NCBI RefSeq assembly: GCF_947568905.1
Contig: NC_079166.1
Location: 65,162,001-65,226,000 of the forward strand
DNA: 64,000 nucleotides
Reading direction: 5' to 3'
DNA from: Ostrea edulis
Lineage: Eukaryota
Shown piece after piece: positions 1 to 59,763 of this stretch. The notes under the pieces were generated by a model, which saw only the letters and a program-made list of their open reading frames with translations, did no database searches and had not been told where the DNA came from. Position 1 is the first letter of the stretch, and each line of letters starts with the position of its first letter. Made by a program: the position numbers and the translations under genes.

Positions 1-1151
1 GGTTTTGACACATTCACCTGAGTACCCTTAACTGCTTCAAATTCAATAGCTAATGATATAGCAGCTTCTAATGGTTGCGGAGGATGAAAAATGACATGGT
101 CATGTATTGCAGAATTGCCTATCCCATTGATAAACTGTTCAAGGACATTGATCTCCCTATCCTTATATGTCATGTCAGGAAATTCCAACCACCCTAGCCG
201 CCTTAAAGAATAACCATAGTCAGCAGAACTCTCACCAGACTTTCTTCTACGTGACCTAAATTCACATCTATGAGCTATAACTAACTCTTGTGGATTGAAC
301 TTTTTGGTCAAGATGGATTTAATTGAATCATAGTCAGATCTCTGTTCAACTGTACGATCACCTAACAACTTCTGAGCTTCTCCTCTTAAACACATAACTA
401 ATTATTGACCCTGTACATGATATGACCACTTATTCCAGGAGGAAACTTGTTCAAAATGCACAATGAAGTATTTCCACTCTACTGATCTACCATCGAACTT
501 ATCAGGTTCTTTTTCCTTTCTAACAGGTTGACTATGATCTGACCTATTGACTCTAGATGTGTCTACAGATGTAAATCTATTTGACCTTTCTGAAGGAAGA
601 GAGTGTAGTGTGCCTAACTGTGTAGGTGTAGTCCTAGCTGTCTGAGTTGTGCCTATTTGACTAGATGTATCTGCCACAGACTTGTATGCATCTAACTGTG
701 ACCTATGTAGTGCTATAAATAACTCTAACTCCTGTCTCTCTAACTCCTTAATTTGCCTCTGTAATGCATCCGTATCTGTTTCCCTACTATGTGAAGATGC
801 ACCCAAACCTACAGGAGAACCTTGAGCTGAATCCTCAAAAGTGACTTTCTGGTCTATTCTAGCACCATTATCAACAAAAGCATGATCACCTAATTTGGCA
901 CTCTTGTTCCGATGCACTGACTTTCTCTTCTCATACTCATTCTTCACTCTCTCATAACATGCAGTCAGTTCTTGAAACTCTCTGTCCATCTCTTTCTCAT
1001 TCATGCTATCGGGCTCTTTTTCAAGGGCTACAAAATCAGGGTAAAGACTATCATCTAATGCATGAGAACGGGCACCTTGAAAATGAATCTTAGGCCTAGC
1101 ACCACTATCTTTGGGTGTGGATGTATGGAAGGGAGGTAAAGGCGAAGTCAT
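1..1151 (-). pseudogene. Gypsy/Ty3-type LTR retrotransposon gag, interrupted by one in-frame stop at 402-404; runs off the window start
   Basis: ORF 402-1151 ends in EPDKFDGRSVEWKYFIVHFEQVSSWNKW. Reading through the TAA gives LVMCLRGEAQKLLGD...FNPQELVIAHRCEFRSRRRKSGESSADYGYSLRRL...LEQFINGI...LEAAISLAIEFEA, a typical Gypsy capsid-like gag. It starts just downstream of a PBS and an LTR end. Confidence 0.85.
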
Positions 1152-8600: not shown

Positions 8601-9317
8601 TCTGTTCATTTCTGATTGTGAATCCTGTAAGTGCCTGATCAATGCCGATAAGTTGCTGAATTTTCTTCTAGTTTCCGATTGTTCAAATTTCAGATGTTCA
8701 ATTGATGTATTCCAAAGACTTTCAATTTCACGACTTTTCTCATCTTTGATTTTATTTTCGTTTTCAATCTTCTCCTTTAAATCTAAAAGTGTCACAGAGA
8801 GGTATCGCACTTCCATTTTAATATCTCCAACAACTTTATTCGTTTTGTTAACGATGCTTTGTCTTTTCTCATCATTTTGTCTTACAATAGAAATTTGGTT
8901 TTCAGTAATAGTTGTAATGTTTTTGTCGACAATGTTAAAGTGGTCTTCAAATTCCTCTATCTTACGATGACACTTCATATTACCGTCCTTAAGCTTTTGA
9001 TTTTCCTGTTGCAAAGTGTCCATACGTATTTTCAATGCAGCTATCGTCTGCTGAAGACTTGATACCGTGGTCTCGGTGGACACCATGTTTCGCTTCATGG
9101 TCTGAATATCGTTCAACAGTGCGTGGACATTCTTGGTCAGAGCTAAGCGAATCACGGTTTCCTGGTTGATGATCTGCCGTAAGACATCCACATCTTTTAT
9201 TTCGCGCCGGTTACCTTCCAAAGCAGTGGAGTTCTGATCCTCAATATCAGTTAACAGCGAGTAAGTCTCCGCTTTAATGAAGACAGCTAAGACTGCGCAA
9301 AACCTTAATAACTTCAT
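2615..9317 (-). CDS. C1qDC gene A: secreted coiled-coil + C1q (gC1q) domain protein, ~421 aa; join(complement 8591..9317, 8288..8416, 2615..3024)
   Basis: Exon 1 has a signal peptide ([16 protein letters not shown]) and heptad coiled coil, with donor ATGG|gtaaaa. Exon 2 is 129 bp (ttacag|...TGTG|gtaaga; [13 protein letters not shown]...[16 protein letters not shown]). Exon 3 follows ttctctttgtag| and encodes a C1q domain (VAFTA...[23 protein letters not shown]...GTYVF...TFSGFKLF). All introns are phase 1, and 727+129+410=1266 nt is an intact frame. Confidence 0.88.
4141..4212 (-). repeat. Degenerate tRNA-derived SINE head
   Basis: Minus strand cggtagtctagtggttagaacgc...ctagttccgctcct shows an A-box and a decayed B-box; no complete cloverleaf. 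Confidence 0.4.
4330..4858 (+). mobile_element. Helentron-associated (HINE-like) element fragment with a ~170-bp satellite-type unit
   Basis: Contains a unit similar to the 58-61 kb arrays (ggctccacccTGACCC...gaagaaaaatgaa...ggtagttctggagaag) and a HINE-type 3' end (gctca...caggtgaactaaaa). Confidence 0.5.
5440..6426 (-). pseudogene. Decayed coding-like remnant inside intron 2 of C1qDC-A; family unresolved
   Basis: Protein-like stretches across frameshifts and stops (…[12 protein letters not shown]…HSCGMLKQ…KKWFLTAN / [26 protein letters not shown]…[13 protein letters not shown]). No domain recognised with confidence. Confidence 0.3.
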
Positions 9318-10519: not shown

Positions 10520-10860
10520 ATTTATACAGAGTTTGGAGGCATTGATTTTGTATAAATTCCGCACAACCGGAGGCGGAGTTTGTATATTACATGTAACAAC
10601 AACCGGAGGCGGAGTTTGTATATTACATGTAACAACAACCGGAGGCGGAGTTTGTATAATACATGTAACAACAACCGGAGGCGGAGTTTGTATATTACAT
10701 GTAACAACAACCGGAGGGGGAGTTCGTATATTTACAACAAGTATGTATATTCACGAATTGGACTACAAGCTGATGAATCAGATTCATTTTGGGTTGATAT
10801 CGTCACACTTAAGTCTAGACCGTTCATTATAGGCACGTTTACCGGCCTCCTCATGATCAA
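10520..10860 (+). mobile_element. CR1/L2-type LINE ORF2 apurinic-endonuclease fragment (decayed)
   Basis: Motifs GGGVCI and, across frameshifts, SRIGLQADESDSFWVDIVTLKSRPFIIGTF-YRPP, characteristic of the LINE APE domain. Confidence 0.7.
10564..10735 (+). repeat. 36-bp minisatellite (caaccggaggcggagtttgtatattacatgtaacaa), 4 full copies + 1 partial
   Basis: Copies start at 10564, 10600, 10636, 10672 and 10708, head-to-tail without spacers. Confidence 0.95.
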
Positions 10861-11309
10861 AGCTTTTTATAGTGTTTAGAGGATAAAATCAGTCAACTAA
10901 GACTATCATTATTGGTGATTGTAATGTATTTCTGCAAAATGTTTCAGTTTCTTTATTCCGTGACACTTAATATATCATACATGTAGGCATTACAATGCAT
11001 GTACAAAGCATATATATTATTATATAATACAATTACATACATGGTATAATAACATCATATATTATTGATTTCTTTTTCAAAATTGCAATCGTAATTGTGT
11101 TTTGCAAAACTATTTTTTCCTAAATTAATTAATTACTACACATTAACTGTATCATCATGAAGACACTTTGTCTTCAGGAGTAGTATGATTCTTGATATAC
11201 TTTTATTAAATAGTTCGCATGCATACCATAGGAATTACAGAAGCATTTTAAATGTATTTGGTTTTATACAATTTATGGAAAATCCTACAGGAGCAAAAAC
11301 AAATGCATG

Positions 11310-12260: not shown

Positions 12261-15101
12261 TTAATAAATCTGAAAACCAGAGAAAGTCATGATTGGAACT
12301 GATTGAGAATAATATCCTGATCCACTATTTCTTTTTACATATACCCTATCACCGCGCTGTAGATGAAGGAGAACCATGTTTGCGGCGTTCTGGTATATAT
12401 TAAAGGAGGGTGATCCAGTTATATACGCCATTGTTTTCACTTTGGCGTTGTCATTATGAACAATATCGAAATATACGTATTTTTTATTATAAGATTGTGC
12501 TGAAAGAAAGAATACGAAATGTCCCTCAGAAGGAGAAGTGAAAATCCCTGTTTTTGAATTGTATCCATCTCCTTCGTTGTAGAGAATTGTTGAGAACACT
12601 AGCGTGCTTCCGCTCCAGCTACCACTGCTAGATGGCATTCCAACCGTAAAACCAATTTTCCCCTTTTGATCTGTGAAATAAAATTTACAAATTTCGATGC
12701 AAATTTAAGTGGTCATTAAAACCTGGACGTGGTAAATGGAATAACACAGTGATAGTTAGCCATCTCATTAATTAATTGACCGGTGCTTTGTTAAAAAGTA
12801 TCTTTTTAACATTTGTCTTACATAGAGCACATCGATGCATGCAGTTCAAATTCAAAGTTCTAAATGAGGTGGATGTAAAGTTGAAATGTCAAACAAAAAA
12901 TGACACGTACCACAACTGTTGCTGGAGAAGTTAATTCGGAAAACCTCCAGGGATGACACGGAGGCCGACAATTTCAATTGTTCAAACTGCATCTGTCTTA
13001 ATTCTGCCCTCAATTTGTCTATTGTTTTGTTAACGTTCCCTAAAACATACCATTACATATGAATAAATAGTAAATTTCATCACAATAAATATAATCCTGT
13101 TACACATGCTGACTATATTGGTTTCGTGTATACATATACAAGTATTTAGATTGAACATCGCATTTGATGCCGGTACAGCAATATGTATCTTTGAGTTCTG
13201 ATATATTTTAATTCACTTTATATTTTATCTAAATTATCTATCATGCCACTGATTAAAAAGTAACATTATCCTTGTTATAACATATGATAAAAGGGTTTAG
13301 AAGATTACGTAATTTCTAATTTCTAAACCTTTGTTACAAATTGCTATTAGGATATAATCATCATAACGAAATTTGCAATGTATAAAACAGATGATAGAAT
13401 TCTGAAATAGGGGAGAAGAGTAATGAATGGAGTAATGAATTGGCAAAATAATGTGGGACAAAAACAACAGTAAGATGCAGAACAAAAATGTCTGAACTTT
13501 TCACCGTGAGGTGAGGTGACGGAGATTATTAGAATGCATGTTTATAGCTTGTTTACAAGATCATGAGGGTGAAATCGATTTTGGTCAGAGGAAACGTGTA
13601 ACCAATCGGAGTGTAAGAAATCAGTCACCAGAGGTCAAGCATTTATATATATTATTTACAAGAAAAATGAAATTAAAAATTATGCAAAACCTTAGAAGTA
13701 AAGTTGAGTATGCAACGCTAAACTATAGATTTTTCAAGGAAATAATTGTGTTGGCTTTGAGTTTGAATTAAAAGCCAATGTCAATATTACAGATTATTAA
13801 GATATAACAAATATGGTAAGGAATTTTGGAGGATGTACGGGGGTATAAATACGAGGAACAGAGACAGAATTCTTCATTAGCTGAACAGAACTTTGTCTTT
13901 GGCCTTTCATTTATACAGGTAAGATATTAAGTATAATTGCGCATTTCTGAAATAACTTTTTAATTTTTCAGATGGTTTCGCTAAATTTTGTGTGTGAACT
14001 TTTATATTAATGCTTGTAATTATCATTGTATATTGTATAATATAAATTGTAATCAATAATTATAATGATGAAATGTTTAATTTCTTTAATAAAAAAGAGT
14101 AGCTGAACAGAACCTTGTCTTTGGCCTTTCATTTATACAGGTTGAACGAGATAGAGCTACTCCGTTCGGCCTGTGAACACACAAAGATCCCTGGTACCTA
14201 ATAAATATTTGCATATCACGCTTTGTGCCATAGCTGACTCCAAAATACTTCTTCCCCCAAACTTGTGTATGAGCTATTACGAAGTTCGAGTCAGTTATGG
14301 GGCGAAATAGGATATGATGTCACACTTAAAGTGAATTAGAGAGGAACAAAAATGCTATATTCTACCCTCGACATCTGAAGACATCAAAGAATATCCTTTC
14401 TCTATGGCTGCTATGGTGTTGTTTAAATGTTCCTGTTTCTTGTTAGATGCTACTAAATTGCCCTCAACCTTCATCAAAGACTTGTTCAAACGTTTAGATA
14501 TATTATTGTACATTTCTTCAACGCGTCCAGGAATCTCTTTTCGTATTTCTCTGGTACTTTCGTTCAAATCAAAGAGTGTAATTGACAGATATCGAACTTC
14601 AGTTTTAGTATCTGTTAAAATTTGAGACATGTTTTTCTCAAATATTTCCCTTTCCTCGCTAAATCTGCGTTGAAATTGTTTTCGATCGTTCCTGATTTCT
14701 TCTAAGTTTTTAATGATATCACTACTTTGATTACTGATACCATCGGTCTTTCCTTTCAGTTTCTGATTGTCCTGCAGCAGTTGTTTATTTTCATCCTTCA
14801 GTGTTTTTATTTCCTGTTCGGTTGTCTGCTTTAAATTAGAGAGACCGTTTTCGGCAATCGATAAACTCTGCTTCAATGTAAGCATGTCTTTCATCAGAGC
14901 GTGTACATTTTTTACTAAAGTCATCCTTATAAGCGTTTCTTGGTTCAAAAGCTGTCGGAAAATTTCGACATTATTAATGTCGCTGGCAGAAACTTCCATT
15001 TTTGTAGCATTCTTTACTTCGTCTGTCACAAGTGATACCCCCTCCATTACTTGGATCGGGATGACCGAAACCAAATACACACAGAGGAGCGGTGATAACA
15101 T
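12261..15101 (-). CDS. C1qDC gene B: secreted coiled-coil + C1q domain protein, ~424 aa; join(complement 14366..15101, 12911..13039, 12261..12670)
   Basis: Signal peptide MLSPLLCVYLVSVIPIQVMEG; RQLLNQETLIRMTLVKNVHAL motif shared with gene A; donor GAGG|gtagaa. The 129-bp exon 2 (gttttag|...TGTG|gtacgt) reads [16 protein letters not shown]. Exon 3 after tatttcacag| encodes a C1q domain ending TFSGFQIY. 736+129+410=1275 nt is an intact frame. Confidence 0.9.
13878..14142. repeat. 43-bp direct repeat (13878-13920 and 14100-14142) flanking a 179-bp AT-rich segment
   Basis: tagctgaacagaac(t/c)ttgtctttggcctttcatttatacaggt occurs twice with one mismatch. Confidence 0.85.
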
Positions 15102-18171: not shown

Positions 18172-18448
18172 CCCGTGGGGATCCGGGTTAGAATAGGTCC
18201 TCAGTACCCTTTGCTTGTCGTAAAAGGCGACTAAATGGGGCGGTCCTTCGGATGAGACAGCAAAAACCGAGGTCCCGTGTCACAGCAGGTGTGTCACGAT
18301 CAAAATCCCCCCTGTCCGATGGCCTTAAGCGCCGAGCATAGGGCTAAATTTTGCAGCCCTGACCTTCACTGGCGGAGGTGACGTCTCCATATATGAGTGA
18401 AATATTCTCGAGAGAGACGTTAAGCTGTATTCAAACAATCAATCAAAC
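18172..18448 (+). mobile_element. SINE-like non-autonomous retroelement (CCCGTGGGGATCCGGGTTAGAATAGG… family), near full length
   Basis: Defined 5' end CCCGTGGGG, central GTGTCACGATCAAAATCCC, tail (CAAT)n. Homologous copies at ~31700-31770, 42128-42336 and 54203-54420. Confidence 0.75.
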
Positions 18449-21866: not shown

Positions 21867-23502
21867 TTATGGGTGGGTTGTATGGTTATAGGGTGGGATA
21901 TTATGCAACTCTTTATACTCGGGACATCTCGGGATGTATTCCTCAATATAATGCTCAACCGTGTCAAGAATTGTATCACAGACACCTTGTATTCTTATGG
22001 GAAATGCGCTTCTCTGACAGGTATCTCTTTTCTCACGGAGCCACACAAGTGTTTCACACATACAATCCAATCTGTTTTCATTTAGAAGCACGTGTTCTAT
22101 GCAAGGCCATACAGAGTTAATCGCTTTAGGTACTGTTGTCAATTGTGTATATCTGAAATCTAGAGTTTTCAGTCTAGGTACTCTGCCAAACGCTTTTTCA
22201 GATATATATTTCAAGGAAGAATTCTGAACAATGAAATGTTCTAAATATCGGAGGTCCTGCAAGTCGTTCTCATCAATTGTTTCTATATCATTGAGGGACA
22301 AATCTAAATCTTTCAAATATCGAATTTCAGAAAGAGCAGCGGGAACTCTCAGAAGGGAACAGTTTCGTAAAGTTAGATTAGTCACAGTTCTTAAATCACC
22401 AACATTCAAATCACTTAAATATCTTAGATTATTGTCATCAATACTAAAATTTTTCAAAGCTGGTAGGTAGATTAAAACTCGGGGAAATTGAGTCAGAGAA
22501 TCGCCATTCAATGACAAAGTCTCCAAGTAAGGGGACTTTAATGGAAAAGACTGAATCAAAATTCCGCGATCTGTGACGTAACGATTCTGATCAAAGTGTA
22601 GCTCTTTTAGATGTTTTAGTTTGCTAATTCCAAGCGGAACTGCAAGCAGATGTGTGTTCTTGATGTTCAAATACTGAAGCGTAGTCTCGAATCCATGAAA
22701 ACTTTCAGCTGAGATGTCACGGACAAATCGACTTAGACCGTCTACAGCAAGTTTATTTAGTATCGGTAAGTGATGTAGCGATGTCGGCCATGATGTCAAA
22801 TATTCATTTCCAATTCTAAGGTCGGTCAGTGAATCACCAAGAGCATGCATCACACTCTCTGTATAATCAGTACCACGAATCATAGGGTTGTGAGTAACAT
22901 CTAGTGTTTGTAAGACAGCGAGTTCTTCCAGCGATTTCGGTAACTTTGTAAATTTGTTGTAACTCAAATCGAGCACTAGAAGAGTGTTCTGAACATCTTC
23001 AAACGCAAGTGAACTGATATTTTGTAAGAGATTTCCTTGCAAGTAAATTTCTTTGAAATGTGTTCCCTTAAATGTTTGAGACGGGATGCTTCGAATTTGG
23101 TTAAAGGATATATCGAAGTAGTCATATGATGTGGAGAAAGTGGGATCCGGAGGGAATGCTGGGACAGACGAGAGATTTCTATGGCTACAGTCTACATATC
23201 TATCCCGACAAGAGCAGTATGAAGCAAGACCTCCGGGACATTGTGCGGTTACTATCACAGGAAGTCCGAGGAAACATGTAAAAATCAGCACAGGAAACTG
23301 AAACGAAATTTCCGGATTTATCAAGTCAATATATTTTGAAACATTTTATTGTTGTTATACTTTAGAATTGTTTAATTTGATGATTGAAACTAAATGTAGA
23401 TTGAAAAGAAAGTTTGATGTACAATGTATTTCGTCCGTGCATCAAACACATTAATTATATCAAAATCATTTGCGTATAGTTTCATACCTTGCAGAGTTCC
23501 AT
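21867..23502 (-). CDS. Secreted LRR-only protein 1 (LRRNT, ~15 LRR, Cys-rich C-cap), ~481 aa; join(complement 23488..23502, 21867..23297)
   Basis: Start exon ATG GAA CTC TGC AAG|gtatga; acceptor tttcgtttcag| phase 0, giving MELCKFPVLIFTCFLGLPVIVTA/QCPGG…CSC…VDC. LxxLxLxxN repeats and a DCMCETLVWL C-cap follow; no TM segment before the stop. AATAAA on the minus strand about 35 nt after the stop. Confidence 0.9.
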
Positions 23503-25789
23503 ATTCTCCTTCCTATCGTTTGGATGATAACAGACTGACAATATTAATAGTCAACTAAAAAGAAAAAGCTGCTTAAATTCGTCGAAGGTAAACACCTAAA
23601 TAAACATACCTAAATTGTCTCGAAATTCAAGCACTCTATGTTGAGAAAGAGATATCTTAGATGCCTCGTTTATCTAACGCTTAGCCTGATTAGATTACGT
23701 AAGCACCACATGCAACATTTTTGAATTTCTTTATGAATATAAAATCGTCTTTGTTTGTAACTTACACGTACGATTGAATATCTCCAGTAGATTATAATAT
23801 GTCTCTATAGAAACTGAGGATAAAACCCCATACTTCCTTTTAATAAAGAAATACACATGTATATGCATATGTATTTCTTTCGGATAAAATCACTTATCCC
23901 AGATTCACATTAAAAACGTACACCATCCTGCATCATCAAACCAAATCATAATTTATCACGAAAGCATATCTGAATTTGTCATCAAACCATATCAACATTA
24001 GCACGTATATCAGAAGACTTTGCTATCAAAGCATATCATCATCTAATACATATTATCAAAGTATATCGATATTTATCACCAAAGCATGTATCAATATTTA
24101 CCATAATTACATATGTACTTGCAATGAAAGCATTTACAAGCATTCAATATTAGAATTTGCTAATATGCTAACAATATTGATTTTTGTAATATGTACACGA
24201 CAACAGTACATGCACCGAAATGATCACCTGCATCACTGTATCAATTGACACACGAGTGCTAATCATTGAGGAGACTAGAAGATCTGGACCTGACTCCACA
24301 GGACGATTCTTGTATATCTACACTCGTACAATATGTAGTCCGTATAACTGGCACAAATATTGTTTTAATTTTTCTCCCTGTAGTTTACATTTTAGATACC
24401 GTATTCAGCACAGAAAAGTATATTGCAACAGAGTTTAAGCCTATAAACTTCATTCCATAAATGATTACACTTATATTATGCAGTAGGCGTATCCAGGCAA
24501 TAGAAAATGTTTTTTCCTGTATGGTTTACGGATCCACTCTGATTTTTATCGCGCGTTGAACGAAATTTGTAGGGCATGTCATTTCCGGATTACAATAACA
24601 ACTAAGTAAACAAGCATGGGATACTTCAATTGCTATTTTCAAAGAAAGGAATCACTAAAACCATTTATAGGAAAATACATTTGATTAAATTATGTGAGTT
24701 GGCAAGGAGAATAGATAAATGGAATATCTTGAGGATATCGGTAAAACCTCACGCCTTCCATCCAAGGATACACGTCTAAATGCGCATTTTCCTTCAATCT
24801 AATTTACACCAAGATACTAAGCACCAATAGTGACTTGGATCGTCATCGTGGGATTGCGCATATCTATTTACGGATCGTCTTCTAGCGAAACCCCAGTTGT
24901 CTCGATGTCAACTTTGCCCTACAATTGCTTACTATCGGGTGACCGCGGTGTGTAAACGTCAAGTCTAATCGGTTGTTCCGGCACATCCCGAAAGTTCTGT
25001 ATTGTGGGAAGCCTTGGAACCAGGAACCATAGTTTAAATAAACTAAGATAACATTACTTGTATGTGCTACAAGAGAATCTTACATAGTAATTTACAACGA
25101 CTTCCTTTCGTTATCTTGAATGTTTTCCCCCAAAAAATCCCCCTTTTAATTTGCTATCCACATATATGCGTCCACCTTGATTTCGAAAAAAAAACAAAAA
25201 CCTCTACGTGAATGAAAGATGAAGATAATGAACAGTGACCCTCTCCACTTGTATGCGTCCACCTTGATTTCGAAAAAACAAACCTATACGTGAATGAAAG
25301 ATGAAGATAATGAACAGTGACCAATCTCATAACTCCTATAAGCAATACAAATCTATCACTATGATGGTGCGCTCTGATAAATCCAATAAATCGAAGACGT
25401 TTGGTTCTTGAGAAAGGTTTTAAAAAAAACAAAATATCCTTTCTATTTCTGTGTGTAATACTTTGGATTCTGATCATGGTCTACCCTGGTCCGACTTCCA
25501 TGGTTTGTTTCTAATTCTGAATTTACTCGTACATTGAGATTCAGGATTTCAAGGACAAGTTGTTCTAGGGAAGATTTTAAAATTAATTTCACAATATCCC
25601 AATTAACTACCCCCTGGAAAGAGGCAAGAGGTTGAAGGGTCCTCTGAATTTGCTTTATTTATTGATAGGTGGACTTTGTGACAAGATACATATGAAATAC
25701 CAAGAGGTTCTGAGAAGTCGGAAATGTGTATACTACATCGACATAATGGCGGACGTCCTTTTTGAAACATGAATGATGTTGGTTAGTTG

Positions 25790-38545: not shown

Positions 38546-38915
38546 TCTTACAAAATGACAAGCAAATACATTTGCTGACTAGCCCAGGTAGCATATGCGG
38601 AAGCCAGGAGTTTATTATACCGACACGAAATGTATGAAAATGTAACAAAAACAATATATGATACACTGTATGAACACTCTACATGTATGAACACTAAAAT
38701 AACAATAGTTGTGACTGATAACATAAATGAATCGAGTATGCTTTCATTAACGACGTCACCGGCCAGGAAACACAAGAAGTAAAAATAAACTCTGGAAACC
38801 TGTGTCCCATACCATGTCGAAATCGCAAATGCGCGCCATCTCCAGGATAATGCAGGGACTTCGTAATTAAAATCTTAAATATGAACATTAAGTGACAAAT
38901 ATATGAAAATAAATG

Positions 38916-39102
38916 ATGAAAGGCGAAGATAACGAACAGTGATCAATCTCATAACTCCTATTAGCAATACAAAATAGAGTGTTGGGCAAATTTGGACCCC
39001 TGGACTCACCAGAGGTGGGATCAGATGCATGGGAGAAGTAAGCATCCCCTGTCCACCGGTCACACCCGCCGTGAGCTCTATATCTTGATCAGGTAAACGG
39101 AG
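38916..39102 (-). mobile_element. Penelope-like element 3' UTR fragment
   Basis: Reverse complement of the 17940-18139 segment (gaaggcgaagataacgaacagtgatcaatctc…tgatcaggtaaacggag). Confidence 0.75.
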
Positions 39103-40118
39103 TAGAATTTTAGATGTACATGTAATCCGTAAAAAAATCATACATCTGGAAAGAAAAGCACAATGAAATCATGTGATGATATAGATATAATATTCAGGCA
39201 CGATGCATCCTTTTTCAAAAAGAAGTAAGGGGGAGGGGGCAGCCGGTGGAGGTGACTTCACAATTGTCTGAAAAAGACACCCCCCCCCCAATACCAAAGC
39301 TATAAATCCTGGCCTGGGGTAAGGGGACAAGTGTTGATCATTCATTTCTTCTGTTAATTTTACATTTTCTATTTCGATGCACTACAGTCTACTATGTAAA
39401 AAGGTAGAGAACCAACCTATTCGTACAGATGGAACTTTTCACGTAATTATCTACCCGTGCGATACTCGCACTATATACCTCTAGATCTGTCAACAGCCTT
39501 ATACAGAAATCTTGTAAAGGTTTCTAATATCCAACAATTGTGTTTTGGACTAAATATTTAGTCCTATTATGAAATGTTTTTGGTGTAGTTAAATTTATGC
39601 TTACTGTAAATTGTTTCAAATCGGTTTTCGGATCCTAAAGGAACTACTTCGTAATATGCGTATGAATGTAGGACATCCACGTGCTGGAAATTTAATGTAA
39701 ACATGGAATCAAAAGTAAGGAAGGCTGTAAAGATACGATAAATTTTGTAAAATAAGATACAAACAGGTACATGGTAAAAATGTACTTAATAAAGTACCAG
39801 TAGGCTTTGAAAAGAGTCTGATGTATCACTTGTTGCCAGAACCTTTAAAGGGAAAGGAAACGAGAATGACTGTTTATATCATGTCGTTATATTGTCACGT
39901 GATTCCAAGCGTTGACGGAGATGTAAGTGAAGTTTGCGTAACGTGCCCTCTGGTGAGAGAATGTGGCTACCGGTAGTCCCCACCTCGACCCTAATTGCCA
40001 CATAACTGCAATACAGATCAGTTGATATACATACATTTATTTTCAAAAGACGAAATCACATGTGAAATAATATCCACCCAGATTTCAATAGAAAGAATAC
40101 ATTAGATATACTGTACAT

Positions 40119-40905
40119 TAGGGGTGCAATGATTCACCACGATGCATCAGAAACCGCGATTCTGTCAGCCAAATCGATTGAGCGAATTCGTTTCGGTCCA
40201 ATAAAAGGTGAAGATAACGAACAGTGATCAATCTCATAACTCCTATAAGCAATACAAAATAGATAGTTGGGTAAACACGGACCCCTGGACACACCAGAAG
40301 TGGGATAAGGTGCATAGGAGGAGTAAGCATATAATACAAAAGAATAGAATGTGTATAAGTTATCTATCCACTTTTCACTTTACAATGGCGCCTTTGATTG
40401 GCTAGAAAACGTCCAATCAATACTTGGGGCACTAATACAAACACAATGGAGGAGCATGATGACACTCTAGTGCTCAAAGATCCTCCCAAGATTAAAAAAA
40501 ATGTGAGTTTTGTTTTGATTATTCCAAATGATTTGCTGCAATTTTGAAATGAGTGCCATTGAGTGGTTAAACAACTTCTTGAGTCAAACTAGCATATGTT
40601 TTTAAGTTTTTTTTTAAAAACTATTTGTGATAGTATATATCTAATTTCTACAAGTTTCTCTAAATCTAAGTTACACTGTACTTAAAAAGTTAAAGGAATT
40701 TATGTCAATTTAATTTAGTCGAGGATGTTTAAAATTTGTCCTTTTTTGAAAAAAAAATTCCATTTATTTATTGAAAATCAATAACATGATATGTAGTGAT
40801 TGAAAGTAAATTATGAATAACCAAGTTACTATTAAAATAATCGAATCGAATGATTAAAATCGAAATCGAGTCGAATTGAAAAGTTGGTGAATCATTTCAG
40901 CTGAA
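40119..40905. mobile_element. hAT-like MITE (TAGGGGTGCAATGATTCACC… left end) containing a nested Penelope-like 3' fragment at 40203-40330
   Basis: Left end taggggtgcaatgattcacc; degenerate right end …aatcgaatcg…ggtgaatcatt; the internal PLE 3' UTR is on the minus strand. Confidence 0.45.
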
Positions 40906-41544
40906 CATTATGTGTAGTTAATAGGATTCATTCATTGAATTGATGATATGCTAAAGACATCTTTATCGTTTATCCTGATCTAAACAAGATGAGGACTAAT
41001 ATCTACAGACTTTGTTACATAATGACCCAACATTGCCTGCGAAAAAATCATACAATGGTCACTTAAATGTAAATCACTGTACAGTCATTAATTACGCTTA
41101 ATTCTTAGAGAAATTCTGGAACTTAATTACAATAAGATGTACATATAGTAAATTTTCCATCTATTCCTTATATTGACGCAATGTATATTCAGGACCGTAA
41201 CGTGTTGTGCACCACTCGTATTTAGGGTGAAATATCTCGTGTTACAATGTGAAAAATGAATATAGACGATGTTAAGAGCCGTGTTCTTTTCGGAAAAAAT
41301 AGATCAATGAAACAAATGAATTTACAACATTTGAAATTGAACTGATTCTATAGTATTTGTATCATAAATTACATAGGCAAAATACATGTCTAGTACAAGA
41401 ATTATTGAGAATATAATGAAATAAAGATGACAAAATTACGCAAATTCAAAGCGTTTTGATAAAAAAAAACAACTTCCTCTGCGAAATCGAATGTAGTCAA
41501 TTTCAACCCCTTTATTTAAATCTAAGTTAATATTATACATTTGT

Positions 41545-41763
41545 TGACTGCGTTTATGGTCAACATGTGTTATGTTGGACCTGAGGATCAAACTCTTGCC
41601 TGAGGCCGAAGGCAACAGTTTGGTTCGAGGGTCCAACATAACACTAGTTGACCGAAAACTCAGTCTAGAAATGCTTTGTTATACCTTCTCTAATAATATA
41701 TAATCAAATAATAAAACGTTTGCTGTTATATATGTATGTATGGTATGTATGTATGTATGTATG

Positions 41764-41827
<64 letters not shown>

Positions 41828-42105
41828 GTATTATGTATTATTCAATCAGTAACAATTCATTGTTCAAACGAACCTGTCCATTGCAAAATCTTGTTGCATT
41901 ACTCTGTCGAGGTGTCCGCCTAAATTGATCGTATTGTCGCAAATGAGGCGTGACGTCGTAGGTCAAAAGTTGACTCGATGTTGACTGAGCAGTCCAACAT
42001 AAAAACAATAAGGGACGGTCAACATTTACTGTGAGAACATTTGAATTATTGGACTTGCTATTATATTGATTTATATAGAAAGTGTTTAATAAAGGTATAA
42101 CAAAA
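41545..42105. mobile_element. Non-autonomous element with a ~120-bp palindromic end centred on GAGGCCGAAGGC (Crypton-like, tentative); contains (TATG)n(TA)n
   Basis: gactgcgtttatggtcaacatgtgttatgttggacc is inverted as ggtccaacataacactagttgaccgaaaactcagtc; TTGTTATACCTT (~41676) is inverted as AAGGTATAACAA (~42092). Confidence 0.45.
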
Positions 42106-42127
42106 ATGATTCAACTGGCCACGTGTA

Positions 42128-42336
42128 GAATTGTTGGATATTGTTTAACATCCCGCTCTAGATTTTTTCACTCATGGAAACGTCACCATCGCCGGCATAT
42201 CTTTATCGTGCCGCACCTGCTGTGACATGGGGTTTGGTTTTTTTTCCCGGTCCCATCCGAGGGACCATCCTAATTAGTTGCCTTTTACGACAAGCAAGGG
42301 GTACTGAGGACCTATTCTAACCCGGGTCCCCACGGG
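42128..42336 (-). mobile_element. CCCGTGGG-family SINE-like element with an internal deletion
   Basis: Ends …cccgggtccccacggg on the plus strand (the family 5' end); tail gatattgtttaacatcc. Confidence 0.75.
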
Positions 42337-43214
42337 CTTCATGTGCAGAATCAAGAAAAAAAAAAACACTTCATAACATATTTTGCCAGTACCATACATG
42401 TATGTACTGAATTAAAACCTACATACATGTAGCTACATATAATTTATGCCATCTTATGCACGTGAGCTGGCTCCCTTGAAATGTTGATATCTACATATTG
42501 TCGTTAATGTGAAATAACTTTCCACTCTATTACGATTTTACGTCTTTTGGTTGATTTTCAAAGTAAACTGTCAATGAGATAGGAACTATTCTATGAGAAA
42601 TACAATGTTTTCTCTTTCTAATATGTACATGTAAATACTAATTAAAAGAATAGATGAATGCTTGCTTTGAAAAGGATCTTATAAATTCTATATATTTACA
42701 ATGTAACATAATAAACTTAAGTCATATTCATCACTTAAAGACTCAATGTTATAAACTTATAGAATTTATAACAAGTTTAAACACGATATTCTATGATATA
42801 GAAGCTGAACAAGAGTTTATCCAGTCTGTTCTCATACTATGTTTGTGCATATACACGTGGAAGCATAAGCATTGTATGTCACACCCTATGAGACTCTAAT
42901 TTGGAAATAAAGAATTCTCTTCTATTCTCTAGGATTGATCAAGGGATTCTCTTGCTCTATGTTCTTGTATGATTCATGATAGCGAAGTCGTGTATCTGTT
43001 TGAAAGAAATAAGGGAAATTTCGAAATAGGATTGACGTTTCCAAAGTCAGAGATAAGACCCTGAGAGCTCTACAGATCAGAAGGAATTCACCGACTGGCA
43101 GTGCAGGTCAGTTATAGATATTCAAAAGATAAGTTTTCAAGTTTTTGTCTTTCAATTGCAGAAATTCAGTGTTGTACAGTATTACAGTAATGTTGTATTT
43201 TTGTAGATTTTACC

Positions 43215-45221
43215 ATGTTGACTTCGTTGTTGGTATGTATGATGTATGTGTGGTTCTCACACACGAATGTGAAGTCCATTTTATAATAACACTAAACGCT
43301 AATAAATGTTTATAAGAAATTGATTCAATGATAATAAGGATAATGATTATAACGAGGAGGATGAAAATCAAACCAGATCACTACACCTCTAATGGTATAT
43401 ATTCATTTCAAAATGAAGGATTATCTCCCTCACGCATAGCTCTTATCCTTAGACGAATTTGACTCCACTTTTTTGGCACACTGTTTTTTCCCTATAATAG
43501 CTCCAAAACTTCATTGTTATTTCGAATTTCAAACATTTCGGTTGAGCATCACTGAAGAGACATTATTTGTCGAAATGCGCATCTGGTGCATCAAAATTGG
43601 TACCGTTTAAGTTTTACATGAGAAACATTCTCCAATTTCGTAATTAACAATTGTAACATAACATGTATTCTCAAACATATAATATCCTCTTCCTGCGTTA
43701 ATGATTTTATTTGATAAAGGAGAGATTTTTGTTTGTTGAGATGTTGAAATATATGCATTGGTAAAAGGTGTACCATTTATCAATTGAATTAGAATGTTTC
43801 ATTTTCGTTAGGTGTGCTTTGCCCTGCTATATAAAGAAGTAGAACCTAGCATTGTTCCAGGAAAACGCGCATATTGTACTCCGCCAACTTCCTATGATGG
43901 CACGTGCAGTTGCGAAAATGACGTCGTGACTTGTACCGGGCAAACGAGGGTGCCAACATTCTCCGGCAGTATTCACTACAAGAAAGTTTCATTTGTCAAG
44001 GGTAACTTTAGAAACATTACCAGTTACGTTAACCCATTTGCAAATCTTCAAACAGATGAACTAGTTCTTCATGATATGGTAATACTGGGAATTCCGGATC
44101 ATGCATTTTTACCTGTGAAATCCATGTTAAAGAAACTGGACCTCTCTAAAAACTATCTCACCGCTTTGCCAAAAGCACTAAAAGACCTCGACGTTCTAGA
44201 GTCCCTTGACGTTTCTGATAATTCTATCGGAGACAAAAATTTTACAGAAGATGTTTTGAGAAAAATTGGAGCGACTCTGACATCATTAACCTTTGGCAGT
44301 TACGATATACTAAATTGGCCACTGACTTTAAAGCATCTTCAGATGTTACAAAATCTTAATCTGACCCGAGCAGCCTTCCAGTTTATGCCTCAGGACGCAT
44401 TTCACGGATTCGCCGGGACGTTACTGACCTTAAGTCTCAGTAAAACGGGGCTTAAATCATTGCCTTTAGCTGTTGCTCGGCTAAATTATTTACAATCCTT
44501 CAACTTTGATCAGAATACCGGTGTCGGAGACTACGGTATGAATGTCCCATTACTACAAGGTATAATGAATTACTTGACAAACGTTTCTCTGAAGCAGGAC
44601 AGTCTTAAAACATTCCCGGAGGCTCTGTCTGTGTTTCATAATTTGAAATCAGTTAGCATGGACTTGAATATGTTAGACTTCGTAAGTGACCACGCAGCGG
44701 GGTCTGTGAAACAGATTGAGAATCTAAGCATGCGCAATTCTAACATATCCCGTATCCCGCAAGCTTTGGCTGACATCACCTCTCTAAAGTCTTTGGACTT
44801 GACGGATAACCGTATACATAGTATTGATGTTCAGGATGTCCAAATTTTACACTCGGTGAAAGAAATCAAACTTAATAACAACCCCATCCTTTACATTTCA
44901 AATCATGCCTTTGACAACAATGGAAATCTGGAACGACTAGAGCTGAGAAACACGAGCTTGAAAGAGGTACCATGTGCTCTAAAATCTGCCATTGAAAATT
45001 TGACACGTGTAAAACACCACTTTCCGTTGACAGTGGACTTATCCAACAACGACATCAGATGCACCTGTGAGCTGAAGTGGCTTGCTGAAACACTCAGCTC
45101 ACATCAAAGCAACATCACGTGGGACATTATTGGAGATTGCGAGACCATCGTTATGAGTATCAATGATTACCTGAATTCAGACAATCTTCTGGGTTGCCCC
45201 TCATCAAATATTTGTAATTGA
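43215..45221 (+). CDS. Secreted LRR-only protein 4, ~475 aa; join(43215..43232, 43812..45221)
   Basis: ATG TTG ACT TCG TTG TTG|gtatgt and ttttcgttag|GTG give MLTSLLVCFALLYKEVEP…YC…CSC…C. ~14-15 LRRs and an RCTCELKWL cap follow; it ends CPSSNICN with no TM segment. Confidence 0.88.
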
Positions 45222-45547
45222 AATGAAATTTTATTAAAACCTGATTGCTCTCTGTCACGCTTATCTTTACAATCAGTTGTTTGTAATTTGTATAGAGGTT
45301 AAGGAGGCATTGACATGCGCAAAGTAGCGTTTGTTATAATGTTATAGATTTACTACATATATATCCACTACGAATGAATGTGGAAAGTTGAATGAATAGT
45401 AAACAAGAAAATGTATTGATGCAAGCATTAATTCGGCCGCATCTATTTGGTAACTATCATAACTATGTAAGGTGGAAAATTGAAGAAAAGGAACGGTGAC
45501 CAATGTCATGAATACCACGATGAATATGAAATTGAGAATATTACAAA

Positions 45548-52456: not shown

Positions 52457-52893
52457 TTAATTTTGATGACGAATAACGAAGGAATTTACATCAGGCATCA
52501 CTCTAAGTGGCCGGCTAGTGGTAGGTCTTTGTTGATCACAATCTGTAAAACATGACTGGAACTTCATGCGGCAAGAATTTTCACAGTTTTCATTTTGACA
52601 GTGTGTGACAGCACAGTTGTAATAAGAATCCCCGCATATTTGGTGACAATCTTCAATTTTTTGCAACAGAACTGGACTTAATGTTGTTTTTGAGAAAAAC
52701 ATAGGGAATGCGTTTGGATCCTGAGCAGCGATTAGAACAACAGTGCATATATAAATGAATAGAATATTCCATGATTCTCGCAATCTGTGAAAAGGAACAT
52801 ATATGTCATTTTTTTCTTTAAATTCCAATTTCTAAAGTAATAGGTATTAGGAACAATGCTTTGAAATAACGGAACGTAAACGACATACCTCAT
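52457..52893 (-). CDS. Small secreted cysteine-rich peptide, 110 aa; join(complement 52889..52893, 52457..52784)
   Basis: ATG AG|gtatgt and ttcctttcacag|A TTG give MRLRESWNILFIYICTVVLIAA/QDP…; 8-Cys core CHQICGDSYYNCAVTHCQNENCENSCRMKFQSCFTDC; 5+328=333 nt is an intact frame. Confidence 0.72.
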
Positions 52894-58153: not shown

Positions 58154-58586
58154 AAACAAGAGGCCCAGGGGCCTTATAGGTCACCTGAGTATCATGTAAC
58201 AACCTTCCAATGTTTGAATTAGGTTTGTGTTTAAATATAAGAATTTTACTTTTGGATGGAAGAAACATTGAATAGCTATGTGGTCAGCCCCGCCTTTGCA
58301 CCAGAACCCCTGTCCCAGGGGCCATAAATTTCAGTTTTGAAAGAAGCATCCTTGATCATCATTATCATACTATTAGTTTGTCTACTTAATACCCAGCAGC
58401 AGAGGAGAAGATTTTCAAAGAAAGAAAATGCATTTTCACTATATGATCAATAGGGCCCCACCCTAATACCAGAACCCCTGACCCAGGGGCCATGAATTTC
58501 ACAATTTCGAAAGAGGCATCCTTGCTCATCATAACCATGCTATTGGTTTGTCTACTTAATACCCAAGGGCAGAAAAGAAGATTTTC

Positions 58587-58620
<34 letters not shown>

Positions 58621-59763
58621 GAGCCCCACCCTAGCACCAGAACCCCTGATCCAGGGGCCATGAATTTCACAATTTTTAACAAGAGGTACTGTGAGCAATG
58701 CTCACTAAGAATACCCCCCGCTTACCCCAATCTCCCAAAGGGTGTTGGTAATAGGTATAAACTACCTCTTTTCTGAGTGTTGCTACTTCGATGTCCAGTG
58801 CGCATGACCTTTGACCTTTTGACCCCAAAATCGATAGGGAACATCTTCATCCCATGGGTAGTCCATATGTATGATATGGTGACTGTAGGTGGAAAGGATA
58901 ACGCTTTAGAGCCCGGAAACCATATTGCTACTTCAATGTCCAGTGCGCTTGACCTTTGACCTTTTGACCCCAAAATCGATAGGGAACATCTTCATCCCAT
59001 GGGTAGTCCATATGTATGATATGGTGACTGTAGGTGGAAAGGATAACACTTTAGAGCCCGGAAACCATATTGCTACTTCGATGTCCAGTGTGCTTGACCT
59101 TTTGACCCCAAAATCGATAGGGAACATCTTCATCCCATGGGTAGTCCATATATATCATATGGTGACGGTAGATGGAAAGGATAATGCTTTAGAGCCCGGA
59201 AACCATTGCGTCTACAGACGGACGGACGGACAGACGGACAACCCGATTCCAGTATACCCCCACAACTTGTTGCGGGGGGTATAAAGAGGCATCCTTGCTC
59301 ATCATTACCATGCTATTAGTTTGTCTACTTAATACCCAGAGACAGAGAAGATTTTCAAAGAATTTCTACATTTTCACTATATGACCAATAGAGCCCCACC
59401 CTAACACAAGAACCCCTGCCCCAGGGGCCATGAATTTCACAATTTTGGTAGAGGGCTCAACGCTCATTATAATTATGCCCACAGTTTGGCTTCTTGATGT
59501 CCAGGAGTAAAGAAGAAGATTTTTTAAAATTACACTCATTTTGATGGTTTTTGCCCCACCCCTCAGGCCCCAGGGGGGCAGGGACCACGAATTTCACAAT
59601 TTTTGTTCCCCTCCACCCTCAGATGCTATATGCCAAAATTGGTTGAAATTGGTTCAGGGGTTTCAGAGAAGAAGCTGAAAATGTTCAAATGTTAACGCAC
59701 GACGAACGACGACGGACAAAAACAGATAGCAATAGGTCACCTGAATGAATTCAGGTGACCTAA
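58154..59763 (+). mobile_element. Helentron-associated HINE carrying ~170-bp satellite-like tandem units
   Basis: 5' aacaagaggcccaggggccttataggtcacctgag; 3' gacgacggac microsatellite and hairpin ataggtcacctgaatgaattcaggtgaccta; unit spacing of 170 bp (58346 to 58516). Confidence 0.85.
58678..59284 (+). mobile_element. Second HINE nested in the first, with ~3 copies of a 145-bp unit
   Basis: 5' aacaagaggtactgtgagc…ataccccccgc; units start at 58781, 58926 and 59071; (GGAC)n; 3' hairpin tatacccccacaacttgttgcggggggtata. The host unit resumes exactly (…aatttt|aagaggcatcc). Confidence 0.85.

What the first reader, a model, noticed from the sequence alone, without database searches (positions are those of the whole stretch)
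21867..45221. Four-gene cluster of soluble, anchor-less LRR proteins with VLR-like architecture
Seen: four intact paralogous ORFs of ~470-480 aa. Each is built as signal peptide, Cys N-cap, ~14-15 LRRs and Cys C-cap, then stops with no TM helix, stalk, TIR or GPI-like hydrophobic tail. They share distinctive motifs (LGDxLxxLxxG…WPxxxxHL, FHGFxxTL, VPL(G/A)(I/V)xxL, CxCExxWL, GxC(D/E)TI). Each solenoid is encoded by one ~1.4-kb exon behind a phase-0 start exon (2-6 codons in LRR1, 3 and 4; unresolved in LRR2). Known: soluble LRR solenoids act as recognition molecules elsewhere (lamprey VLRs, mosquito LRIM1/APL1 with complement-like TEP1). Inference: this may be an undescribed, locally expanded family of secreted bivalve recognition or matrix proteins that automated annotation would label only as generic LRR-like.
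Basis: partly seen in the sequence, partly recalled or inferred. Interest (0 to 1): 0.78.

Follow-up and report, generated by a model that had tools for sequence, protein, structure and literature searches.

The report
Old bivalve family of secreted LRR proteins

Summary
The window (Ostrea edulis) holds four intact paralogous genes of 481, 468, 469 and 475 aa. Each has a hydrophobic leader, a Cys N-cap, 15 LRRs and a Cys C-cap, then a stop. Each is one ~1.4-kb exon behind a start exon of 5, 1, 2 or 6 codons. RNA contigs show the LRR2 mRNA polyadenylated ~127 nt after the stop, with no splice joints. No TM, TIR or GPI-like tail exists. Databases do give the family only inconsistent generic names, and I found no paper on it. 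But it is not a recent local expansion: each gene has 1:1 Saccostrea orthologues, paralogue dS is saturated, and relatives occur in Crassostrea, Pinctada, Mytilus, Tegillarca and Potamilus, often in tandem clusters. Orthologue dN/dS is 0.08-0.125, and concave-face positions are not hypervariable. Likeness to VLR or LRIM is generic cap-LRR-cap architecture only. The most likely role is a secreted binding protein for a conserved partner; the function itself is inferred, not shown. This is a new member of a known kind, of modest interest. Earlier notes of this scan concern other LRR families, not this one.

The parts
23488..23502 (-). LRR1 start exon, coding part: ATG GAA CTC TGC AAG, then donor GTATGA
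   Evidence: Sequence. The spliced product equals RefSeq XP_048769885 (P0084). A 5-codon exon with the same donor and acceptor is conserved in relative L009.
21867..23297 (-). LRR1 main exon: rest of leader, N-cap, 15 LRRs, C-cap and stop. AATAAA lies at 21833-21828, 36 nt after the stop.
34119..34121 (-). LRR2 start exon, coding part: a lone ATG, then donor GTAAGG. The intron runs 34118-31634 (2485 nt).
   Evidence: Best of two ATG|GT sites upstream of LRR2. It lies in an 80%-identical island shared with relative L014, and GAAATG|GTAAGG is identical in both. It agrees with the 468-aa RefSeq protein M|IWFVVV. No RNA joint was observed.
30230..31633 (-). LRR2 main exon (acceptor cattag|ATT) through the stop at 30232-30230
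   Evidence: RNA contigs run collinearly from 30753 to 30101 across the stop.
29880..30229 (-). LRR2 3' UTR. Major poly(A) site at ~30101-30105 after AATAAA at 30121-30116. Minor site at ~29880 after AATAAA at 29899-29894.
   Evidence: Oligo-T/adapter loose ends in four RNA runs; hexamers located.
36056..36061 (+). LRR3 start exon, coding part: ATG ATT, then donor GTATGT
   Evidence: ATG + 1 codon + GTA(T/C)GTA is conserved in relative L013.
36322..37725 (+). LRR3 main exon (acceptor aaaccag|GCC) through the stop. AATAAA lies at 37745, 22 nt after the stop.
43215..43232 (+). LRR4 start exon, coding part: ATG TTG ACT TCG TTG TTG, then donor GTATGT
   Evidence: The model has no internal stop. 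There is no independent RNA or orthologue DNA confirmation, and the S. echinata model has a different N-terminus.
43812..45221 (+). LRR4 main exon (acceptor cgttag|GTG) through the stop. ATTAAA lies at 45233, 14 nt after the stop.
34122..36055 (.). About 1.9 kb between the divergently transcribed LRR2 and LRR3 start exons; a possible shared regulatory region
   Evidence: Geometry. Partly conserved in relatives. Shared regulation is an inference.

Best explanation
Shown: these are four expressed-type, two-exon genes of Ostrea edulis. Each encodes a ~50-kDa protein of mildly acidic pI (5.4-6.2) with a cleavable-looking leader, a disulfide N-cap, 15 LRRs, a disulfide C-cap, 7-9 N-glycosylation sequons, and nothing else. 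They belong to an old bivalve family with at least two subfamilies: A = LRR1/2, ending in a CPxYKExxxIxPYN tail, and B = LRR3/4. Members usually sit in tandem clusters. Each oyster gene has 1:1 orthologues under strong purifying selection. Inferred: the proteins are secreted and act as soluble extracellular binding proteins for a conserved partner. That partner is more likely an endogenous protein, or an invariant ligand, than a fast-changing pathogen surface. The mode of action would resemble other soluble cap-LRR-cap proteins such as IGF acid-labile subunit, LRG1, chondroadherin or tsukushi. It would not resemble diversified receptors such as VLRs. The A and B genes, which are head-to-head here and in Mytilus, may be co-regulated.
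For: Gene models. Domain content is LRR only. Structure: pLDDT 90.4, 15 strands plus caps. No TM or GPI-like hydrophobicity, and poly(A) signals 14-111 nt after each stop. LRR2 mRNA is polyadenylated at 30101-30105 with no joints, in 4 RNA runs of a single study. No TIR-like or TM-like coding potential lies downstream. Family: 13 A-type and ~20 B-type clusters of 420-485 aa, well separated from generic LRR hits (>=349 vs <=61 bits; >=222 bits (P0004), then two divergent Pinctada-type members at 112-110 bits and generic LRR below). About 40 full-length single-stretch representatives appear in the exhaustive search. Taxa: Crassostrea/Magallana, Saccostrea, Pinctada, Mytilus, Tegillarca, Potamilus. 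Tree: LRR1-4 each fall in a 100/100 clade with Saccostrea orthologues. Selection: omega is 0.081, 0.078 and 0.125 for LRR1, LRR2 and LRR3 against an ~87%-identical relative; paralogue dS is saturated. Concave-face omega is 0.096, 0.174 and 0.109, all far below 1. Concave identity is only slightly lower than convex across the family (0.32 vs 0.40) and equal within the LRR1, LRR3 and LRR4 orthologue groups. Clusters: Mytilus A(-)|B(+)B(+), C. gigas LRR4-like(-)|LRR2-like(+), Pinctada tandem pair, Tegillarca adjacent genes.
Against: There is no direct evidence of secretion, ligand or tissue. The RNA libraries are 3'-tag-like and of unknown tissue, come from one study, and cover LRR2 only. LRR1, LRR3 and LRR4 rest on RefSeq or orthologue models and sequence signals. 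The signal-peptide call is heuristic, and LRR4's cleavage site is poor. Purifying selection does not exclude immune recognition of invariant microbial patterns. LRR2 orthologues show excess concave variability (identity 0.59 vs 0.74, p=0.006; omega 0.174 vs 0.082). Two C1q-domain genes lie next to the cluster. dN/dS is pairwise NG86 against one relative with dS 0.65-0.86; site-wise positive selection on a few residues was not tested.
Confidence: 0.7

Rival explanations
1. Humoral immune pattern-recognition proteins or opsonins, as reported for scallop LRR-only proteins. They would bind microbial patterns in haemolymph or mucus, possibly together with complement-like or C1q-domain proteins.
For: LRR-only proteins are described as pattern-recognition receptors in the scallop Chlamys farreri (PMC5877582). 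The proteins have a secreted architecture. Two C1q-domain genes are adjacent. LRR2 concave positions evolve about twice as fast as convex ones.
Against: Omega is ~0.1 overall and below 0.2 on the concave face. Orthology is 1:1 with no lineage-specific bursts. The concave face is not hypervariable in LRR1, LRR3 or LRR4. C1q-domain genes are very numerous in bivalves (my own knowledge), so adjacency is weak evidence. The scallop proteins have 1-4 LRRs, and no homology to them was tested.
Confidence: 0.25
2. VLR-like or otherwise diversified recognition molecules, with many variable copies under diversifying selection (the flavour of the first reader's title).
For: Only the shared LRRNT-LRR-LRRCT layout. 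The LRR2 N-cap has the spacing Cx3CxCx6C, which from my own knowledge is also seen in VLRs.
Against: The genes are intact in the germline as single exons. There are 15 LRRs and no stalk, GPI or TM. Selection is purifying and the concave face is not hypervariable. The only VLR-containing entries in the fold-search lists are LGR4-VLR fusion constructs and a TLR5-VLR complex; the alignable long solenoids there are LINGO-1, LGR4/5 and TLRs. There are only four copies here and no fragments or cassettes.
Confidence: 0.02
3. Extracellular-matrix or shell-matrix structural proteins, like small leucine-rich proteoglycans, that organise a matrix.
For: Secreted, glycosylated, acidic LRR-only proteins. 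Chondroadherin is among the structural matches (Z 26.2, rmsd 3.5 A over 315 residues). Strong conservation fits a structural partner.
Against: There are 15 LRRs and a CxC...C...C C-cap rather than the 10-12 LRRs and 'ear' cap of SLRPs (the SLRP features are from my own knowledge). No glycosaminoglycan-attachment or low-complexity matrix motifs were noticed. No accession of the family occurs in the main text of any searchable paper, shell-proteome papers included; supplements were not searched.
Confidence: 0.12
4. Mis-annotated ectodomain exons of membrane receptors (TLR-like or LRIG-like), whose TM and cytoplasmic exons lie downstream.
For: The nearest solved folds are receptor ectodomains, and the automatic names suggest LRIG or LRRC15.
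Against: LRR2 mRNA is polyadenylated 127 nt after the stop, with matching AATAAA and no joints. Poly(A) signals follow all four stops. There is no TIR-like or TM-like coding potential downstream. All relatives, in at least 8 named species, end 0-22 residues after the last cap cysteine, and subfamily A has a conserved C-terminal tail.
Confidence: 0.03

Closest known systems
Vertebrate soluble cap-LRR-cap proteins (IGF acid-labile subunit, LRG1, carboxypeptidase N subunit 2, chondroadherin, tsukushi)
   Same: Signal peptide, Cys N-cap, a long run of LRRs, a Cys C-cap and then the end of the protein; they act by binding conserved partners. Chondroadherin 5lfn aligns at Z 26.2, rmsd 3.5 A over 315 residues including the C-cap. 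Chondroadherin-like and tsukushi appear among weak sequence hits.
   Different: Identity is about 20%, with no orthology. The family signature is absent from them: the irregular LRR4-8 with ..GD.L..F.FG...WP..L.HL, FHGF..TL and VPL...L, and the A-type tail CPxYKE...PYN. No ligand is known here.
LINGO-1, LGR4/5 and TLR5/8/9 ectodomains
   Same: These are the best structural superpositions of the whole solenoid (Foldseek TM 0.5-0.6; VIA Z 27-30; LINGO-1 rmsd 3.5 A over 362 residues) and have a similar repeat number.
   Different: They are parts of membrane receptors with Ig, 7TM or TIR modules. Here the protein and the mRNA end after the C-cap. The list of structural matches is flat (Z 26-32 for about 50 unrelated LRR proteins), so no specific kinship is implied.
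Scallop LRR-only proteins CfLRRop-1 to -6
   Same: Bivalve proteins made only of LRRs, proposed as soluble pattern-recognition molecules (PMC5877582).
   Different: Their immune induction and PAMP binding were measured; nothing was measured for this family.
Lamprey/hagfish variable lymphocyte receptors
   Same: LRRNT-LRR-LRRCT order and N-cap cysteine spacing (the spacing in VLRs is from my own knowledge).
   Different: VLRs are assembled somatically from cassettes, have far fewer LRRs, carry a stalk with a GPI or TM anchor, and have hypervariable concave residues (my own knowledge). None of this holds here.
Mosquito LRIM1/APL1C
   Same: Secreted LRR proteins encoded by paralogues. A paired A/B action is conceivable here because of the head-to-head arrangement.
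   Different: LRIMs carry a C-terminal coiled-coil and a cysteine for heterodimerisation (my own knowledge). The model here shows no coiled-coil. By my reading of the Cys positions, none is left unpaired (A-type: 11 Cys, one at a buried Asn-ladder position; B-type: even number). The disulfide pairing itself was not computed.

Membership tests
Extracellular LRR proteins with LRRNT and LRRCT caps (general class) | N-terminal signal sequence | tested here: met
   The only hydrophobic window with KD19 above 1.2 is at the N-terminus in LRR1-3. LRR4 also has an internal window of 1.38 at residue 90, too weak for a TM helix. The best 8-residue hydrophobic windows score 2.4-3.3. Small residues sit at -3/-1 in LRR1-3, while LRR4 is non-canonical. 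The model is disordered over residues 1-22. No dedicated predictor was run.
Extracellular LRR proteins with LRRNT and LRRCT caps (general class) | Four-cysteine N-cap and CxC...C...C C-cap flanking the repeats | tested here: met
   C25, C33, C35, C42, C417, C419, C445 and C463 are invariant in 26 sequences. Pfam LRRNT scores 23.4 bits against a cut-off of 25.8 for LRR1, and LRRCT is not detected by Pfam. The model shows cap elements.
Variable lymphocyte receptors | Incomplete germline gene completed by somatic insertion of LRR cassettes | tested here: not met
   The complete solenoids are encoded in single germline exons. The window holds no extra LRR cassettes or fragments.
Variable lymphocyte receptors | Hypervariable concave beta-strand residues | tested here: not met
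   Concave vs convex identity is 0.32 vs 0.40 family-wide and equal in the LRR1, LRR3 and LRR4 orthologue groups. Concave omega is 0.10-0.17.
Variable lymphocyte receptors | C-terminal stalk with GPI or TM anchor | tested here: not met
   The proteins end 6-18 residues after the last cap Cys, the tails are hydrophilic, and the LRR2 mRNA ends there.
LRIM family (LRIM1/APL1) | C-terminal coiled-coil domain after the LRRs | tested here: not met
   No residues remain for it. DSSP of the model shows only cap helices up to residue 469 of 481.
Toll-like receptors | Transmembrane helix and cytoplasmic TIR domain | tested here: not met
   No TIR in Pfam. tblastn with four TLR C-termini finds nothing better than E=0.26 in the window, and there is no TM-like open segment downstream. 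Poly(A) follows the stop.
Small leucine-rich proteoglycans | About 10-12 LRRs with a C-terminal 'ear-repeat' cap | tested here: not met
   There are 15 LRRs and an LRRCT-type CxC...C...C cap. The definition of the ear repeat is from my own knowledge.
Bivalve LRR-only proteins (CfLRRop type) | Sequence homology to CfLRRop-1..6 and measured PAMP binding | not tested
   CfLRRop sequences were not retrievable with the tools used. Only the review's description (1-4 LRRs) was read.
This bivalve family (A/B secreted 15-LRR proteins) | End-to-end collinear match of ~440-490 aa with invariant G168, W175-P176, F205, CxC...W...GxC and one big coding exon | tested here: met
   Invariant columns in 26 sequences. 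There are single-stretch full-length matches in the exhaustive search. The gene structure is the same in relatives L009, L013 and L014.

The most novel reading that the evidence does not exclude
The A-type and B-type genes, head-to-head in both oyster and mussel, encode two halves of a conserved heteromeric humoral complex. By analogy with mosquito LRIM1/APL1C, this complex would present or stabilise a complement-like or C1q-domain effector in bivalve haemolymph. That would be an independently evolved LRR-adaptor arm of invertebrate immunity.
Probability: 0.08. Interest if true: 0.65.

Novelty: new member of a known kind. Interest (0 to 1): 0.3.

Why it matters
The result gives a clean definition of a conserved, bivalve-wide and possibly molluscan family of soluble 15-LRR proteins. 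Databases currently scatter this family under at least seven unrelated names, which can mislead transcriptome and GWAS interpretation in oysters and mussels. It supplies exact gene models, including start exons of 1-6 codons that gene callers easily miss. It also shows that the family evolves conservatively, so it should not be counted among the diversified immune-receptor repertoires of bivalves without functional evidence. The conserved clustering suggests a testable hypothesis of co-regulation or partnership between the A and B types. Beyond that it is an ordinary lineage-restricted LRR family of unknown function.

Tried and rejected
(1) Logan contigs carrying LRR2 (22 contigs that all start at the same base) looked like mRNAs. 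They are collinear with the genome over 31730-29020 and end at homopolymer or repeat boundaries, so they are genomic DNA and say nothing about splicing. The JGI contigs L009, L013 and L014 are likewise genomic, but were useful as orthologue DNA.

The libraries are 3'-tag-like and cover only the last 300-650 nt, so the joint was not observed. The start exon rests on cross-species conservation plus the RefSeq protein.

(3) The strict donor scan for the LRR2 start exon gave other candidates at 35.6-35.7 kb that do not fit the 468-aa protein. A second ATG|GT at 33855 lies outside the conserved island. Both were rejected.

(4) Searches for family accessions and UniProt ids in papers returned nothing. 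A hit for 'LRIG3' in a C. gigas gene table is only a same-name entry and was not shown to be this family.

(5) Fold searches give a flat list of LRR solenoids with no functional lead.

(7) The idea of a covalent A/B dimer through a free cysteine was rejected by inspection: the odd cysteine of A-type proteins sits at a buried Asn-ladder position of LRR11, and B-type proteins have even counts.

(8) Strict conservation of the head-to-head A|B order in all bivalves does not hold. In Pinctada the A-type gene is followed in tandem by a member of another clade, and no B-type lies within 10 kb.

(9) The earlier scan notes found concern a different LRR family, one fused to a dead protease.

Full report
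**Observation**

Pfam sees only LRR families in them (LRR_8 E = 1e-21 to 1e-29). LRRNT is just under its cut-off for LRR1, and there is no TIR, Ig, death or kinase domain. In the four-way alignment, identity to LRR1 is 51, 34 and 34%. tblastn of the four proteins against the window finds no further copy or fragment.

**Gene models**

Upstream of each big exon there is a polypyrimidine/AG acceptor in phase 0, and further upstream a short ATG exon with a strong donor.

- LRR1: ATG GAA CTC TGC AAG|GTATGA at 23502-23488, joined to 23297.
- LRR3: ATG ATT|GTATGT at 36056-36061, joined to 36322.
- LRR4: ATG TTG ACT TCG TTG TTG|GTATGT at 43215-43232, joined to 43812.

A cluster look-up shows the window is Ostrea edulis. 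The spliced LRR1 and LRR2 products equal the RefSeq-type proteins P0084 (XP_048769885, 481 aa) and P0088 (468 aa) residue for residue.

Only two ATG|GT sites exist upstream. The one at 34121-34119 (ATG|GTAAGG) lies in an 80%-identical island shared with an orthologous contig of a related oyster, and GAAATG|GTAAGG is identical in both. The LRR1 and LRR3 start exons are conserved in form in the same relative. The four proteins are 481, 468, 469 and 475 aa.

**Architecture**

An AlphaFold2 model of LRR1 built on a 26-sequence family alignment is confident (pLDDT 90.4, pTM 0.85). It shows an N-cap hairpin, 15 regularly spaced beta-strands and a helical C-cap. Only residues 1-22 and 479-481 are disordered. 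The repeats are 23-28 residues long and in clean LxxLxLxxNxL register.

Hydropathy finds the only strongly hydrophobic stretch at the N-terminus, and the last 30 residues are hydrophilic. The mature proteins would be about 50-53 kDa with pI 5.4-6.2 and 7-9 N-glycosylation sequons. Eight cap cysteines are invariant across the family.

**Do the transcripts stop there?**

Yes for LRR2, on direct evidence. In four RNA libraries of one study, contigs run collinearly from 30753/30700/30416/30405 down to 30101-30105, across the stop at 30232-30230. They end in oligo-T/adapter loose ends, which is a poly(A) tail on the minus-strand mRNA. A minor site lies at 29880. No joints were seen, and the remaining ~5 kb of intron and intergenic DNA is silent apart from a dispersed repeat at 31701-31752. 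AATAAA hexamers sit at 30121 and 29899, about 20 nt before the two sites.

The other three genes have AATAAA or ATTAAA 14-36 nt after the stop. tblastn with the C-termini of four TLRs finds no TIR-like coding potential in the window (best E = 0.26). No TM-like open segment lies downstream of any gene. All relatives end 0-22 residues after the last cap cysteine, and subfamily A has a conserved tail CPxYKExxxIxPYN.

**Family and history**

The word search with LRR1 returns 13 clusters of 419-485 aa at 349 bits or more, then a drop to 61 bits or less for generic LRR proteins. With LRR3 it returns about 20 clusters at 222 bits or more. Named members come from Magallana/Crassostrea gigas, angulata and virginica, Saccostrea echinata and cucullata, Pinctada imbricata and Mytilus galloprovincialis.

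The exhaustive profile search adds about 40 full-length single-stretch representatives. Those that could be named include Tegillarca granosa (Arcida) and Potamilus streckersoni (Unionida). A land-snail protein aligns collinearly with the profile (E = 1.8e-27 over 393 columns) and keeps some landmarks. Any two LRR proteins align well, so this is only suggestive.

A maximum-likelihood tree puts each of LRR1-4 in its own 100/100 clade with Saccostrea orthologues; LRR2 also has Crassostrea orthologues. Pinctada sits in an unresolved fork with the LRR1 and LRR2 clades, inside a 100/96 clade. Mytilus sits in an unresolved fork with LRR3 and LRR4, in a clade with only 89/83 support. Deeper clades lie outside.

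**Synteny**

- Mytilus has A(-)|B(+)B(+), mirroring A(-)A(-)|B(+)B(+) here.
- C. gigas has an LRR4-like gene (-) next to the LRR2 orthologue (+).
- Pinctada has an A-type gene followed in tandem by a member of another clade.
- Tegillarca has two adjacent members.

The cluster is therefore old and is not a local expansion.

**Selection**

Nei-Gojobori dN/dS against the ~87%-identical relative is 0.081 (LRR1), 0.078 (LRR2) and 0.125 (LRR3), with dS 0.65-0.86. Between the window paralogues dS is saturated.

Partitioned by structural class, omega at the exposed concave positions (x3, x5, x7, x8 of LxxLxLxxN) is 0.096, 0.174 and 0.109. Convex and loop positions give 0.095, 0.082 and 0.086.

Mean pairwise identity at concave positions is 0.32 against 0.40 at convex positions across 26 sequences. 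The two are equal within the LRR1, LRR3 and LRR4 orthologue groups. Only the LRR2 group shows an excess of concave change (0.59 vs 0.74, permutation p = 0.006).

By their positions in the repeat register, the family-signature motifs (GD.L, WP, FHGF, VPL) lie outside the concave beta-strands, in the irregular central repeats LRR4-8. This is my reading of the register, not a separate computation. Taken together, this is the pattern of a protein with a conserved partner and not of an arms-race receptor.

**Comparison with known systems**

Sequence search of the PDB and fold searches give a flat list of LRR solenoids. Foldseek puts LINGO-1, LGR4/5 and TLR5/9 at TM 0.5-0.6. VIA-align gives Z 26-32 for Leptospira LRR proteins, LINGO-1 (rmsd 3.5 A over 362 residues), TLR5, LGR4, LRRC8 and chondroadherin. 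None stands out.

VLR membership fails on germline integrity, repeat number, anchor and hypervariability. LRIM membership fails on the coiled-coil. TLR membership fails on TM and TIR. SLRP membership fails on repeat number and cap type.

Bivalve 'LRR-only proteins' are already a named concept (CfLRRop-1 to -6, with 1-4 LRRs; PMC5877582). So soluble LRR proteins in bivalves are not new as a kind. This particular 15-LRR family has no paper in the searchable library and carries at least seven unrelated automatic names.

**Mechanism**

Shown: the gene structure, the architecture, the lack of an anchor, polyadenylation of LRR2, the age of the family, its clustering and purifying selection.

Inferred: secretion, and action as a soluble binding protein for a conserved partner.

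My rough odds are:

- endogenous or invariant ligand, by analogy with ALS, LRG1, chondroadherin or tsukushi: about 0.5;
- humoral pattern recognition: about 0.25;
- matrix role: about 0.12;
- the rest, including a membrane-receptor mis-annotation: small.

**Limits**

- No dedicated signal-peptide or GPI predictors were available.
- dN/dS is pairwise only.

Noticed in passing
window 2615-3145 with 8544-9317, and 12261-12638 with 14355-15101 (minus strand): Two tandem C1q-domain genes. In each, an exon encoding a signal peptide plus a coiled-coil region lies upstream of a C1q-domain exon (Pfam C1q E=2e-20 and 3e-21). They lie downstream of LRR1 on the same strand.
   Followed up: partly
window 52457-52828 (minus strand): ORF for a small Cys-rich secreted-looking peptide with no Pfam match. 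It was already noted by the scan as s1-279282.
   Followed up: no
window 31701-31752; also 26304-26377, 25792-25856, 18247-18298: Dispersed repeat (probably a transposable-element fragment) inside the LRR2 intron. RNA contigs match it at 90-95% identity with unrelated flanks. Copies are shared with the related oyster's contig L014. Public genomic contigs break at it (31730) and at homopolymer tracts near 29020-29080 and ~32640.
   Followed up: partly
L010:2007-3414 (C. gigas, minus strand): The LRR4-like gene of C. gigas matches in two pieces in different frames that overlap at 2671-2678. This may be a frameshift, a pseudogene or a tiny intron. The called product of 833 aa is probably a merged model. 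No LRR3-like copy lies between it and the LRR2 orthologue.
   Followed up: no
P0106 (Pinctada, 560 aa), P0343 (Tegillarca, 907 aa), P0089 (548 aa): Over-long family members look like gene-model fusions of neighbouring tandem copies or of upstream ORFs (P0106 contains a partial first copy followed by a full one). They do not look like genuine longer architectures.
   Followed up: partly
window 10533-10879 and 58386-59284: ORFs made of tandemly repeated peptide units (for example TTGGGVCILHV repeats). These are most likely translated minisatellites, not genes.
   Followed up: no
window 34119-34121: A first coding exon that contributes only the ATG, separated from the rest of the CDS by a 2.5-kb intron. 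All four paralogues keep start exons of 1-6 codons, a feature that prokaryote-style and some eukaryotic gene callers miss: the public ORF calls start at internal TTG/GTG codons.
   Followed up: yes
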